Program-made: the position numbers and the translations under genes | Assembly: GCA_053919585.1 (NCBI GenBank) | Contig: CM132786.1 | Direction: 5' to 3' (one strand) | Length of the DNA: 64,000 nt | DNA from: Euprymna scolopes | Lineage: Eukaryota | In this document: piece after piece, positions 29,518-49,786 of the stretch | Layout of the letters: each line of letters opens with the position of its first letter | Position numbering within the stretch: position 1 is the stretch's first letter | The notes under the pieces: model-generated | Told to the model about the DNA's origin: nothing | Seen by the model: only the letters and a program-made list of their open reading frames with translations | Databases searched by the model: none

Positions 29518-29860
29518 TTAATTTTATTTATACAAACATTAATGGCTACATATGTGCATACATGTTTCTGTAATCACCCCCGTTGGGGGATTACGTCTTC
29601 AGGCCAAGAATTACCGTCGAAAGTGATATTTCCACCAAATACATTTTCCTATTTCGTTTATCAAGTTAGAATGCAACCTGGGTGGGAGTCATAAAAACGG
29701 TAAGAGGATGAGTGAGGTCTTTGAAGATAATAAACATCTTTTTCATATCCCTCCCCCCCATCCAACCTAACTTTTGGTTTTTATGGCATAAGGTACTTGA
29801 GAATGTAGTTTTTTTTGTCTTGGAGTCTGTAAGTTAAGAACCTTAGCTATGGTCAACTAA
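29518..29860 (-). repeat. Left inverted pLTR segment
   Basis: Reverse complement of 32887-33229, highly similar. Example: AAGAATTACCGTCGAAAGTGATATTTCCACCAAATAC versus GTATTTGGTGGAAATATCACTTTCGACGGTAATTCTT. Confidence 0.95.
29543..29606 (-). ncRNA. Type I hammerhead ribozyme, core motifs intact
   Basis: Minus strand: UGGC CUGAAGA C-GUAAUCCCCC-AACG-GGGGUGAUUAC-A GAAA CAUGU-AUGCAC-AUAUG UA GCCA. Stem I UGGC/GCCA, core CUGANGA plus GAAA, cleavage triplet GUA. Confidence 0.8.
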
Positions 29861-31130
29861 TAACAGAGAACAATGAGCAAAAAATGGGCAAAACGACTTT
29901 TTCGGGGTATCAATTTAATCGCTGGACTATGCAGAGGCAACATAATTCTTTGGACTTTATATCATTTATAATTTAACAAAAGATAATATCATTGATGGAA
30001 GGGACATGGTCTTATATCGTGATGATGGGCTGATAATAGTGAAGAATGCTACAAGTGTTAAATGTGATCAGATTAGGAGAGCAATCCATAGGGACATGAA
30101 AGATTTTGGGCTAAAAGTAGAAGTTAATGCTAACTTAAAACAGGTTAATTTCCTTGACATTACTTTAGATCTGGATTCAAATACTTATAAACCATATATT
30201 AAGGATAATGCTAATCCTATTTATATACACCCGCAGTCTAACCATCCACCATCCATTATTAAACATATACCGTTATCTATTGAAAGTAGAATAAGTAACA
30301 ATTAATCTAATGAAGTAATTTTCAATGATTGCAAAGCTATTTATAATACAGCACTTAAAAATAGTGGGTATAAGGACGTAGAGATAAAATATAAAGAAAC
30401 TAACGCTAGCATAAATGGATCTAGAAATCGTGGTAGGAAAATTATGTGGTTCACACCCCCCTTTAATATTATGTTGAAAACAAAACTTGGTACACAATTC
30501 TTACAAATTATTAACAACTATTTCCCACCAAATAATATATTACATAAAATATTTAATAAAAATACATTAAAATTAAGTTATAGCTGTAGTGATAACTTAG
30601 AAAGGATTATAAAAAAGCATAATGGAAGAAGTTTAAAGACGACTTATAGAGAAGGTGAAAATACTAGTGCAAACACTGCGGTGAATAAATGTAACTGTAA
30701 AAAGCCTGAGGAATGCCCGATAAAAAATGAATGTCAGACCTCATAAGTGGTATACCAAGCTAGGATATTCCCGCTCGAACACCCAAGGGACGAAAGATTC
30801 TACATAGGGAGTAGCCAAATGACTTTCAAAAATAGATTCTATGGGCATACACGCTCGATGAGCAATCAAACATATGAAAAGGACACTTCCTTATCGTTAT
30901 ATTACTGGAAATTAGTTAGAGAAAATAAAACACCTAGAATAGAATGGAAGATTATTAGGAGGGCCAATACTTGCCACTCATTGATCTCACCATGTCCATT
31001 ATGCTTATCAGAAAAAACTTGAGATAACTAGGTTTAAAGACAGGGAAAAATATTAAATATTAAACAAGAAACTGCTATATTCTGCAAGCATTTCAGAATA
31101 CAATTACTTAAAGAACTCAAAATTAGTAGA
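29860..31130 (+). pseudogene. Penelope-like (Naiad) RT plus zinc finger plus GIY-YIG endonuclease, inactivated
   Basis: Collinear same-frame ORFs 30006-30305, 30444-30746 and 30747-31022 are separated by single TAA stops. Motifs: DYAE..FFGLYII, LYRDDGL, VNFLDITLDL, YIHPQSNHPPSI, ALKNSGY, WFTPPFN, KLSYSC, CNCKKPEECPIKNEC, VVYQA...FYIGSS..FKNRFYGH, CPLCLSEK. A frameshifted LEIT..ILNIKQE..FCKH tail follows. Confidence 0.93.
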
Positions 31131-42946: not shown

Positions 42947-43004
<58 letters not shown>

Positions 43005-45022
43005 GTTTTATTTTTATTAAAGTATTTTTCTGCTAAGTTACAGTATTGTTTCAACTACCCGGCCGTTGTTTGTCCGTCTGTAGCTTCCTCAGATTTTATA
43101 GAAAAAAAGTTTTTTTTTTTTTCTGTAAAAGTCTGAGAAACCTACGGTAATAACAAAAATAAAACGCATATTTGTTCTGCAACAGTATTGAACACATTCT
43201 TCNNNNNNNNNNNNNNNNNNNNNNNNNNNNNNNNNNNNNNNNNNNNNNNNNNNNNNNNNNNNNNNNNNNNNNNNNNNNNNNNNNNNNNNNNNNNNNNNNN
43301 NNNNNNNNNNNNNNNNNNNNNNNNNNNNNNNNNNNNNNNTTAGGTATCGGATTTTAATGACAGTTTCGGTAGAGGGCATGTTTTTAACGCCAGTTAATCA
43401 TAATATATTTTTTTTAATTTTCGATTACTTTTTTATTGTATTTAAAAAAGTATAGTTTAAAAGAGTATAGTTTAAGTTAATTTCTCCAAGAAAAAAAAGG
43501 GTATGAAATAAAAAATAAATGGAATAATTTCATATCGAATCTGAAACAAACCTACATTTCACGTAGAAAATCATTATGCAATATTTCGTGCAAGAAAAAT
43601 ATAAGTTTTCTGGAATTATTTACAAGTTGTCATTTACCGTCTTACCGAGCGAATTTTGGGGCACAAGAACCGCCCTTCCTACATCAAAAATGCATAAAAC
43701 TTAATAAAATCCATTAATTATATTGCAGACAATTTATGCATTTAAAAAAGTTCGCATTATTATTCATTAATGTTAATACAGAATTACAATTGGTAAAGAA
43801 CACAATTTTAAATTATTGAAAAAATTACACACTAAAAATACAGATTACGTTAAATTTATCATAATGTTTACGTAAATTTAAACTTGATAAACACAAACAG
43901 GCTGGAAGTTAAAGACAGGCGGCAGTTGTGCCAAATAGATAGGTTTTCTTTTCAACTCTGTGCATCCGTATTGACTTATATGGAATGTTCGTATCATTTA
44001 CGCCATTTTTAAATTAAATTATTTTTCTATGTTTCTGTTTTTTCATTTTTTTGTTTACTTTATTTTCCAAGATTATATGGACATTAGCTTACGTTGGTGA
44101 TTATACGTTCATGCGTGCAATAGAAATATTAGAAACTTACATGCAAAGAATACGTTAAAAATGTAAGCGTAAAAAAGTAGAAACAATTTTTCAATTATAA
44201 TTTTCTTTGTGAAAATATTAAATAAAAATGCTTAATTGAATGATGTTATTGGTAGTTCGAGAAATTAATTTTCATCGAGTTATATCGATTTCGTTAATAC
44301 GGACTTTAGGGTGTTTTTTCGTAAGGTTCCCGTAAAACGTATTTTATTTTTATTTAATTATTATAAATTGCGATGATTTATTTACATAAAAAAACAAAAA
44401 TAATTCTTGGGTTTTTATTTACTACTAAAAAACATAACTTTAGTAATGGTATTTTTGGTTTAAACAAAATAATACATTTTCACTAACATTTAAATAAAAA
44501 TAATTAGTTCATTATATTCCGCCATGAACATTTGTTAAATAATGAGAATTTCATTAGAATTGGTTAATTTCCTGACTTTTGGTGAATTCTTAAGTAAAGG
44601 GAGGAGTCAAAACGTTTATACATTTTGAGCATCGGCATTCATTTTGCCCGTATCTACTGTTCGTAAACAAGCGGTTTGAGAACTATAAAAAAGGTGAACG
44701 GACGTTTTTTTTTTTAAATGCACATTTGTTGAGGTTGTGATAGAACGAAACAGGATTGTATGTGAATGACTACAAATATATTTTAAACCCTTCTCTTTGG
44801 GTGGAGTACTGTCGTAAATAATCTAACCGGCTACATAATAGGTTGTAAAATAGAAGGCTCGCTGTTGTTTTTGTAAACAAGCGGTGTGAGCGCTATAAAC
44901 ATTGCTGGACGAATCAACATTTGTGGAGGTAATTTACGGGCGCCGCAACCCGTGTGTCGATGGGTACAACTGCCGACTGCCAAGGCGATGGTTGTAGGTA
45001 AATTTCTGGCTCGGGAAAGGCG

Positions 45023-49318: not shown

Positions 49319-49383
<65 letters not shown>

Positions 49384-49566
49384 AAGAACGCATAGCATAG
49401 ATTTTACCAAGCAAGCTGGATCTAAAAAAAACTTTCATATCCTTTTTCTCCAAATCCTCCTGCTACAGGACTTCTGATAAATTCATTATTTTGATTTTGA
49501 CTTTCCATGTCTCACTTACTTTAGCAAATAGTGTGCATAACTTTATAAGTGTTTGCTAATATTTTC

Positions 49567-49614
49567 TCTCCTCTGATGAGATGGTAGACATCGAAACCCT
49601 ATAGGTTAAGGAGA
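49567..49614 (+). ncRNA. Minimal type I hammerhead ribozyme
   Basis: TCTCCT CTGATGA GATG-GTAGA-CATC GAAA CCCTATAGGT TA AGGAGA. Perfect 6-bp stem I, exact core, 4-bp stem II, near-palindromic stem III, predicted cut after A49608. One C.U mismatch at 15.2/16.2. Confidence 0.85.
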
Positions 49615-49725
49615 TTAATTTTCTAAAGCATTCTTTGTCTTGCTAAGAATAATAAAATTCTTTGCTATGAAACTCAACCACTTCATTTCATTTCAATGGG
49701 AGTTTTTTGACATTCATTGAATTAC

Positions 49726-49786
<61 letters not shown>

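What the first reader, a model, noticed from the sequence alone, without database searches (positions are those of the whole stretch)
49381..49728. ~345-bp non-coding unit with a minimal hammerhead, embedded in a (TA)n tract (solo pLTR or retrozyme candidate)
Seen: the unit is bounded on both sides by (TA)n and holds a near-perfect HHR (49567-49614) with AATAAA ~40 nt downstream. Its sequence is unrelated to the HHR at 29543/33140. Stem III CCCTATAGG(T) is one change from the palindrome ACCCTATAGGGT. Established: palindromic stem III lets minimal HHRs cleave as dimers; small non-LTR retrozymes and PLE pLTRs are of this size; some PLEs favour microsatellites. Inference: a second ribozyme-bearing family, possibly mobilised by PLE RT and possibly forming circular RNA.
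Basis: partly seen in the sequence, partly recalled or inferred. Interest (0 to 1): 0.75.

Follow-up and report, generated by a model that had tools for sequence, protein, structure and literature searches.

The report
Truncated Penelope-like retroelement end with hammerhead
The 348-bp stretch is a dead, front-truncated copy of the tail end of a very abundant Penelope-like jumping gene (Hydra clade) that lands in (TA)n microsatellites and carries that family's hammerhead ribozyme motif. This is the known pattern for the class, so the finding is real but ordinary.

Summary
Window 49379-49729 is a discrete repeat copy between two (TA)n runs, and 49567-49614 has every conserved hammerhead core base.

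It is not a self-contained 345-bp unit. Other copies run further 5' by variable amounts. ORF-bearing copies join the same sequence to a roughly 890-aa RT plus GIY-YIG protein. That protein carries the published Hydra-clade motifs: RWK, DKT, YRDD, CxCx5C, CxxC-E and N..CxH.

- **Copy number:** an HHR 28-mer occurs 2,722 times in the genome.
- **Target site:** 25 of 28 sampled 3' junctions lie in (TA)n.
- **Two 3' end classes:** with or without a 147-nt tail, matching the PLE tail signature.
- **Partner copies:** 12 of 30 copies have a head-to-head inverted partner.
- **No tandem arrays** were seen, so it is not a retrozyme.
- **The "defect":** U at 16.2 is the family's own state, not decay of this copy.

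A covariance model built only from hammerheads of 21 unrelated metagenomic Hydra-like elements ranks this motif first in the window (E about 6e-4).

The scan has already reported the same element class elsewhere in this genome. Verdict: a new member of a known kind, of low to moderate interest.

The parts
49343..49380 (.). Upstream (AT)19 microsatellite, preceded by a (CA)n run; the 5' part of the target site
   Evidence: TA run of 38 nt at the 5' flank
49379..49729 (+). 5'-truncated, tail-less copy of the 3' end (pLTR sequence) of a Hydra-clade Penelope-like element
   Evidence: About 95% identical to at least 40 scored copies out of 1,952 candidates. Homology to longer copies begins and ends here. 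The same sequence lies directly upstream of the PLE ORF in L038 and other loci.
49567..49614 (+). Type I hammerhead motif. Helix I is 49567-72 with 49609-14. The CUGAUGA core is 49573-79. Helix II is 49580-92. GAA is 49593-95. Helix III is 49596-49607. The predicted cleavage site is after 49608 (register A, UUA) or after 49607 (register B, GUU).
   Evidence: Descriptor scan. Model R1, built from relatives, gives the top window hit at 49569-49612 with 21.7 bits and E 5.9e-4. The 48-mer is identical in 22 of 45 sampled copies.
49651..49656 (+). AATAAA hexamer, present across the family's copies; a possible polyadenylation signal, untested
49730..49783 (.). Downstream (AT)n microsatellite; 3' junction of the 'short' (tail-less) class
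   Evidence: 25 of 28 true 3' junctions in the sample abut a (TA) run of at least 10 nt

Best explanation
Window 49379-49729 is a dead-on-arrival, 5'-truncated insertion of the last ~350 nt of a high-copy Penelope-like retroelement (PLE) of the Hydra clade, sitting in a (TA)n microsatellite.

At this locus the hammerhead is a passenger with no function.

**Shown at family level**
- The element is about 5.1 kb: a 5' UTR of about 185 nt, a roughly 890-aa RT plus C-terminal GIY-YIG ORF, and a 3' UTR of about 2.3 kb. The last 348 nt of that UTR is this unit.
- Insertions are 5'-truncated at variable points, often with a head-to-head inverted partial copy.
- Insertions lie in (TA)n.
- They end at either of two sites 147 nt apart, which is the PLE 'tail' signature.
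- The hammerhead lies 115-162 nt before the end-to-start junction. In partial tandems it therefore sits upstream of the next copy's 5' UTR.

**Inferred**
- The GIY-YIG nuclease with its CxCx5C linker nicks (TA)n.
- Reverse transcription starts at two internal A/U-rich sites of a read-through or multimeric RNA.
- The hammerhead trims such RNAs, probably weakly, and as a dimer through its CCUAUAGG palindrome or with protein help.
- Cleavage is not required for insertion.
For: **Repeat and truncation**
- The unit has 1,952 candidate copies, about 95% identical.
- The 28-mer has 2,722 exact copies against 0 for the control.
- 5' starts vary widely. 18 sampled copies have the short end and 12 carry the tail. 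12 of 30 have an inverted partner. 25 of 28 3' junctions are in (TA)n.

**Link to the coding element**
- In L038 the unit's 3' part plus the 147-nt stretch runs straight into the ORF.
- The long non-coding copies match the 3' UTR that follows the ORF in 7 or more loci at 87-94% identity.
- L037 shows a partial tandem with an upstream pLTR of at least 1.4 kb.

**Protein**
- More than 1,393 homologues at 35-44% identity.
- Alignment A1 and the translations show RWK, DKT, YRDD, CxCx5C, GIY..YIG, CxxC-E and N..CxH. These are the Hydra-clade diagnostics of Craig et al. 2021 (PMC8557442). That paper also reports (TA)n insertion and universal HHRs for the clade.

**Hammerhead**
- In 80 metagenomic relatives, 41 descriptor hits are on the sense strand and 1 is antisense. 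They lie about 110-190 nt after the ORF, with an AC..palindrome..GT helix III and mostly A17.
- Model R1, built from 21 of these, scores the window motif top at E 5.9e-4 and also hits the family's other copies.
- The homodimer is predicted 8 kcal/mol more stable than two monomers, through the 8-bp palindrome.

**Tail**
- Frangieh et al. 2024 (PMC11167929) show two internal RT start sites producing the PLE tail. They also show a protein-assisted HHR that is dispensable for insertion in vitro.
Against: - Transcription, cleavage and circles are therefore untested.
The alternative register needs a bulge next to the cleavage site.
- Rfam hammerhead models do not report the motif even at E 10. They also miss all 18 relatives tested, so this silence is uninformative.
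- Pfam does not call RT or GIY-YIG on this family's ORF.
- None of 11 sampled ORF copies is intact.
- No sampled copy begins at the predicted cleavage site.
- The element is about 5 kb, whereas described Hydra elements are under 3 kb.
- Clade placement rests on motifs, not on a tree with reference sequences.
- Copies were sampled by best match, not at random.
Confidence: 0.87

Rival explanations
1. The identity is the same (a PLE 3' end), but the hammerhead-like motif of this family is catalytically dead. On this view it is a relic fixed in the master copy with a broken 15.2-16.2 pair, and it plays no part in the element's life cycle.
For: - U at 16.2 is the family state, while C15.2-G16.2 is invariant in 21 of 21 relatives.
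- No insertion begins at the cleavage site.
- The fold energy is no better than shuffles, z = -0.51.
- Published PLE hammerheads cleave poorly in vitro (PMC4209133) and are dispensable for insertion (PMC11167929).
- Naiads proliferate without HHRs (PMC8557442).
Against: - All 11 core bases, G10.1-C11.1, a 6-bp helix I and a 4-bp helix II are intact in the family state. The 48-mer is identical in 22 of 45 sampled copies.
- An alternative register restores a canonical C-G/A-U helix III with a cleavable GUU site, and it is the predicted MFE fold.
- The 8-nt palindrome is perfect.
- The family reached thousands of copies while carrying this motif.
Confidence: 0.25
2. It is a separate non-autonomous, retrozyme-like element. 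Its transcript would self-cleave, circularise and be copied by a PLE reverse transcriptase in trans.
For: - Most copies are non-coding.
- The size matches animal retrozymes.
- The palindromic helix III suits dimeric cleavage.
- The 147-nt tail, a copy of the element's 5' start placed after its 3' end, would also arise from a circular or multimeric template.
- A 2026 preprint derives animal retrozymes from PLE pLTRs (10.64898/2026.07.22.740005).
- Two long non-coding copies start at the same point, about 140 nt after the stop codon.
Against: - No head-to-tail arrays: among 100 listed copies there is no same-strand neighbour within 2 kb, only 6 head-to-head inverted pairs.
- 5' ends are variable, not fixed.
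- The sequence is contiguous with the ORF and 3' UTR of coding copies at the same identity level.
- No insertion ends or starts at the ribozyme site.
Confidence: 0.06
3. It is an unrelated SINE or MITE that happens to contain a chance hammerhead-like string.
For: - It is short, non-coding, high in copy number and flanked by TA.
- By chance alone, hundreds of descriptor matches are expected in 5.9 Gb.
Against: - No terminal inverted repeats or discernible target duplications were seen.
- Copies extend into a PLE 3' UTR and ORF.
- Relatives carry hammerheads at the same place and on the same strand, 41 to 1.
- The model built from those relatives picks this site first in the window.
Confidence: 0.02

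Closest known systems
Hydra clade of C-terminal-EN Penelope-like elements (Craig, Yushenova, Rodriguez & Arkhipova 2021, PMC8557442)
   Same: - Single ORF with RT then GIY-YIG.
- RWK motif, and DKT in place of DKG.
- CxCx5C linker, with CxxC and CxH around the conserved E and N, and no CCHH between GIY and YIG.
- Insertion into (TA)n.
- Canonical-core hammerhead in the pLTR.
- Partial tandems and inverted 5'-truncated partners.
- An aquatic-invertebrate type of host genome.
   Different: - About 5.1 kb rather than under 3 kb, because of a microsatellite-rich 3' UTR of about 2.3 kb.
- A 95-residue N-rich insertion between GIY and YIG.
- Thousands of copies.
- Helix III is not the clade's usual AC..GT 10-mer and has U at 16.2.
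- Placement rests on motifs only, with no tree.
Minimal and canonical type I hammerheads of metazoan PLEs (Cervera & de la Pena 2014, PMC4209133)
   Same: - Type I topology in the pLTR.
- Helix I of 6 bp and helix II of 4 bp with G10.1-C11.1.
- A short helix III with palindromic sequence that allows an extended dimeric helix.
- Expected low monomer activity.
   Different: - The palindrome is 8 nt (CCUAUAGG), flanked by a C.U mismatch.
- Activity is untested here.
Poseidon PAc 'tail' and internal RT initiation (Frangieh et al. 2024, PMC11167929)
   Same: - Two alternative 3' junction classes that differ by a stretch also present at the element's 5' region.
- AT-rich targets.
- The hammerhead is not reflected in insertion ends.
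   Different: - The tail is 147 nt rather than 30-40 nt, and it lies in the 5' UTR rather than inside the ORF.
- Both junctions here sit next to A/U-rich RNA that could pair with a (TA)n primer, whereas PAc shows no homology to the nicked DNA.
- Nothing was shown biochemically here.
Animal non-LTR retrozymes (Cervera & de la Pena 2020, PMC7229834; Li et al. 2026 preprint)
   Same: - A type I hammerhead with palindromic helix III in a unit of a few hundred nt.
- An evolutionary link to PLE pLTRs.
   Different: - No tandem arrays.
- Variable 5' ends.
- Contiguous with a coding PLE.
- No circRNA evidence.

Membership tests
Hydra-clade Penelope-like element | RT domain followed by a C-terminal GIY-YIG endonuclease in one ORF | tested here: met
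   L038 ORF: FDI..Y.SI and GLYRDD motifs, then VVY...YIG..R..H. It aligns over these with 15 homologues. Homologue P0001 hits Pfam GIY-YIG. Pfam itself is blank on the query.
Hydra-clade Penelope-like element | RWK motif at the N-terminus, and DKG changed to DKT | tested here: met
   NVRWKAY and VPADKTKN. Both are conserved in A1. The criterion comes from PMC8557442 section 11.
Hydra-clade Penelope-like element | CxCx5C linker, CxxC and CxH flanking the conserved E and N, and no CCHH in the EN | tested here: met
   CNCLNKNEC, CNLCISE and N..CKH. All are invariant or near-invariant in A1, and relatives have only about 8 residues between GIY and YIG.
Hydra-clade Penelope-like element | Insertion into (TA)n | tested here: met
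   25 of 28 3' junctions abut a (TA) run of at least 10 nt. The window copy has (TA)n on both sides.
Hydra-clade Penelope-like element | pLTR / partial tandem structure, inverted 5'-truncated partner, optional tail | tested here: met
   Upstream partial copies in L037, L038 and L046. Inverted partners in 12 of 30 copies. 12 tail-bearing against 18 short ends.
Hydra-clade Penelope-like element | Short element (<3 kb) | tested here: not met
   About 5.1 kb by adding the natural copies' segments. The metagenomic relatives have units of 2.39-2.49 kb. The source paper calls this feature 'generally' true, not diagnostic.
Hydra-clade Penelope-like element | Groups with reference Hydra RTs in a phylogeny | not tested
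   No reference (Repbase) sequences were available to the tools.
Hammerhead ribozyme, type I | Conserved core: C3 U4 G5 A6 N7 G8 A9, G12 A13 A14, A15.1-U16.1, H17 | tested here: met
Hammerhead ribozyme, type I | Three helices around the core, with helix I open | tested here: inconclusive
   Helix I (6 bp) and helix II (4 bp) are clean. Helix III has either a C15.2.U16.2 mismatch or, in the MFE register, 3 clean pairs plus a bulged A in helix I.
Hammerhead ribozyme, type I | Recognised by a covariance model | tested here: inconclusive
   Rfam gives no hammerhead hit at gathering or at E 10, but it also gives none in 18 relatives. A custom model from 21 relatives gives 21.7 bits, E 5.9e-4, and the top window hit. 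E-values are rough, and the training set was picked by my own descriptor.
Hammerhead ribozyme, type I | Self-cleavage | not testable with these tools
Animal non-LTR retrozyme | Head-to-tail tandem arrays of HHR-bearing monomers | tested here: not met
   No same-strand neighbour within 2 kb among 100 listed copies; there are 6 inverted pairs instead.
Animal non-LTR retrozyme | Circular RNA of monomer length | not testable with these tools

The most novel reading that the evidence does not exclude
This Hydra family copies from a hammerhead-processed, circularised or multimeric RNA.
- The 147-nt tail would then be the reverse transcriptase running across the end-to-start junction.
- The two A/U-rich start sites would be chosen by pairing with the nicked (TA)n.
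- The imperfect palindromic helix III would make cleavage dimer- or protein-dependent.

If so, this would be a PLE whose integration is microhomology-primed, unlike the one PLE studied in vitro.
Probability: 0.1. Interest if true: 0.6.

Novelty: new member of a known kind. Interest (0 to 1): 0.22.

Why it matters
Taken alone, this locus is an ordinary transposon fragment and should be annotated as such. It is not a gene, not a retrozyme and not a regulatory ribozyme.

At family level it has modest value:
- It documents a Hydra-clade PLE that reached several thousand copies in a 5.9-Gb animal genome, with an unusually long 3' UTR and a long (147-nt) tail.
- It supplies thousands of natural (TA)n junctions that could test how PLE reverse transcription is primed.
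- Rfam's hammerhead models miss this whole class of PLE hammerheads, so genome scans that rely on Rfam will under-call them.

Tried and rejected
**Searches that gave nothing useful**
- Rfam at gathering and at E 10: no hammerhead hit. It is also blank on 18 relatives, so the silence is uninformative.
- Pfam on the ORF and its halves: blank.
- PDB sequence search: nothing meaningful.
- Fold energy against shuffles: z = -0.51, uninformative for a 48-mer.

There is therefore no read evidence.
- I did not send L038:496-532 to any search, genome, paper or findings tool afterwards. It was still inside the files used for local BLAST and the R1 model search. A later own-genome search also used the homologous stretch of a different copy (L032:2250-2700).
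Loci could not be cut for the same reason.
- The look-up of sequencing runs found only partial holders, mostly of uncertain RNA/DNA status. I do not count this as expression evidence.

**Ideas rejected**
- That the 2.06-kb insert splitting the unit in L032 marks the unit as a deletion derivative of the coding element. It is one chimeric copy.
- That a (TA)n separates the tail from the ORF. The sequence is continuous.
- That insertions start at the ribozyme cleavage site. None does.

Selection on the motif cannot be read from within-family copies, because they are dead on arrival.

Full report
**1. The observation**

- An (AT)19 run ends at 49380, and a second (AT)n run begins at 49730.
- Between them lie about 350 non-coding bases.
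- At 49567-49614 the string reads: TCTCCT, CTGATGA, GATG-GTAGA-CATC, GAA, ACCCTATAGGTT, A, AGGAGA. That is every conserved hammerhead core base, a 6-bp helix I, and a 4-bp helix II closed by G10.1-C11.1.
- AATAAA follows at 49651-49656.

A strand-blind descriptor finds exactly this one site in the window. The descriptor requires helix I of at least 5 bp, CUGANGA, helix II of at least 4 bp, GAAA, an insert, U16.1 and H17. Only 1 of 200 dinucleotide shuffles contains any site. In a 5.9-Gb genome that background would still give hundreds of chance hits, so the case rests on context.

**2. It is a repeat, and not a 345-bp unit**

The 348 bases have 1,952 candidate matches in the genome. All 40 scored matches are about 95% identical. 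A 28-mer across helix II, helix III and helix I occurs 2,722 times, against 0 for the reversed control. In my sample, 28 of 45 copies keep that 28-mer, so the family probably has about 4,000 or more ribozyme-bearing copies. That total is an estimate.

In the 30 fetched loci:
- Homology continues upstream of the window's 5' edge by anything from a few bases to more than 900 bp.
- 12 of 30 carry a head-to-head inverted partial copy immediately upstream.
- 25 of the 28 true 3' junctions abut a (TA) run of at least 10 nt.
- The 3' end falls in two classes: 18 end where the window copy ends, and 12 carry 147 further bases before the (TA)n.

**3. The coding element**

One locus (L032) has a 2.06-kb insert splitting the unit. 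That insert is an internal piece of a longer repeat with a long ORF.

In L038 the unit's 3' part plus the 147 nt runs without interruption into the 5' UTR and ORF. Downstream of the ORF comes the same 3' UTR that makes up the long non-coding copies, at 87-94% identity in seven or more loci. L037 shows a partial tandem with an upstream pLTR of at least 1.4 kb. Genome coordinates likewise place the 3' UTR about 600 bp after the ORF fragments listed.

Adding natural segments gives about 5.1 kb: roughly 185 nt of 5' UTR, an ORF of about 2.7 kb, and a 3' UTR of about 2.3 kb whose last 348 nt is the window's unit. The 147 nt is therefore the element's own 5' start repeated after its 3' end. None of the 11 sampled ORFs is intact; the longest is 754 aa.

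**4. Which family**

Pfam and PDB searches are blank. The large protein search returns more than 1,393 homologues at 35-44% identity. One of these, from the bivalve *Solemya velum*, carries a Pfam GIY-YIG hit.

The translations and alignment A1 show RWK, VPADKT, GLYRDD, CNCx5C, VVY..YIG..R..H, CNLC..E and N..C.H. Craig et al. 2021 give exactly these as the diagnostics of the Hydra clade. They add that almost all Hydra families insert into (TA)n and that canonical hammerheads are universal in the clade (PMC8557442).

Differences in this family:
- It is about 5 kb long rather than under 3 kb.
- It has an N-rich insertion of about 95 residues between GIY and YIG.

I could not build a tree with reference sequences.

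**5. Is the hammerhead a real family feature?**

Copies within the genome are dead on arrival, so their identity says nothing about selection. I therefore fetched 80 metagenomic loci encoding relatives.
- The same strand-blind descriptor gives 41 sense-strand hits and 1 antisense hit.
- The hits lie about 110-190 nt after the ORF.
- In contigs holding two hits, the spacing is 2,386-2,486 bp, which is one element length.
- Their helix III is typically AC-palindrome-GT followed by A17.

In a curated alignment of 21 of these, helices I and II covary heavily, and A15.1-U16.1 and C15.2-G16.2 are invariant. The 100% pairing there is partly by construction, because the descriptor required pairing. 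The strand and position bias is independent of that.

A covariance model built from those 21 sequences, none from this genome, gives these results:
- The window motif ranks first in 64 kb on both strands, at 21.7 bits and E 5.9e-4.
- The hammerhead of the window's other Hydra-type element ranks second, at 29543-29606 and E 0.009.
- It also finds this family's other copies.

Rfam misses all 18 relatives tested, so its silence on the window means little.

**6. The helix III question**

Among the first 100 listed copies, position 16.2 is overwhelmingly T, with a few A, one C and no G. The mismatch therefore belongs to the master copy and is not decay of this copy.

CCUAUAGG is a perfect 8-nt palindrome. 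A homodimer is predicted at -30.8 kcal/mol, against -22.8 for two monomers. This fits the dimer logic described for metazoan type I hammerheads (PMC4209133).

Whether the motif cleaves is unknown.

**7. Mechanism**

*Shown:* (TA)n targeting, variable 5' truncation, inverted partners, partial tandems, and two 3' end classes.

*Inferred:* the two end classes correspond to two internal start sites for reverse transcription, as demonstrated for an Anolis Poseidon element. There the stretch between the two sites is the 'tail' (PMC11167929).

In this family both junctions sit just before A/U-rich RNA..ACAAUU|UAAU.. and ..GAAG|AAUAUUAA... Pairing with the nicked (TA)n is therefore possible, but it is not shown.

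No sampled insertion begins at the predicted cleavage site. This agrees with the in vitro finding that hammerhead cleavage is not needed for insertion.

**8. What could not be done**

- The run search showed only partial holders of uncertain kind.

Expression, cleavage and circular forms are therefore untested.

**9. Verdict**

The thing is a typical truncated insertion of a Hydra-clade PLE.

Earlier notes of this scan reached the same class for other DNA of this genome.

It is a new member of a known kind, of low to moderate interest.

Noticed in passing
window 43035-43096 (-), with (TA)n at about 42980-43010: A third hammerhead-like motif (CTGAGGA ... GAAACAATACTGTA). It scores E 0.027 with the relatives' model and is followed about 50 nt later by a (TA)n run. 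It is probably another truncated Hydra-type PLE end from a different family.
   Followed up: partly
window 29543-29606 (-) and 29880-31091 (+): The other hammerhead in the window also matches the relatives' model (E 0.009). The adjacent ORF is 30-33% identical to this family's protein. This is a second, distant Hydra-type family in the same window.
   Followed up: partly
L032:2785-5185 (+) = G000:C2:130134284-130136684: A chimeric copy: unit positions 1-136, then 2.06 kb of internal ORF sequence (N-terminal domain to mid-endonuclease), then unit 141-348. It looks like template switching or an internal deletion during copying.
   Followed up: partly
L038:1051-3312 (-), residues ~543-640 of the ORF: An insertion of about 95 residues, rich in asparagine, between the GIY and YIG motifs. 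It is absent from all 15 aligned relatives. Part of it aligns to the linker and GIY region, suggesting a decayed internal duplication.
   Followed up: no
L032 and L033 (reverse strands, about 7276 and 7409): Two long non-coding copies begin at the same point, about 140 nt after the stop codon. Seven of 30 shorter copies start within 8 bp of each other (L007 coordinates 1408-1415). These may be preferred truncation or template-switch points, or sub-families.
   Followed up: no
L047-L126 (metagenome contigs): Many contigs of 2.4-2.8 kb hold one complete Hydra-like element. Several hold two hammerheads one unit apart (2,386-2,486 bp). Rfam's hammerhead families detect none of the 18 contigs tested, so Rfam does not cover this class.
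   Followed up: partly
G000 contig C1-C2 list: 12 of the first 100 ribozyme 28-mers lie in minus/plus pairs 163-473 bp apart.
   Followed up: partly
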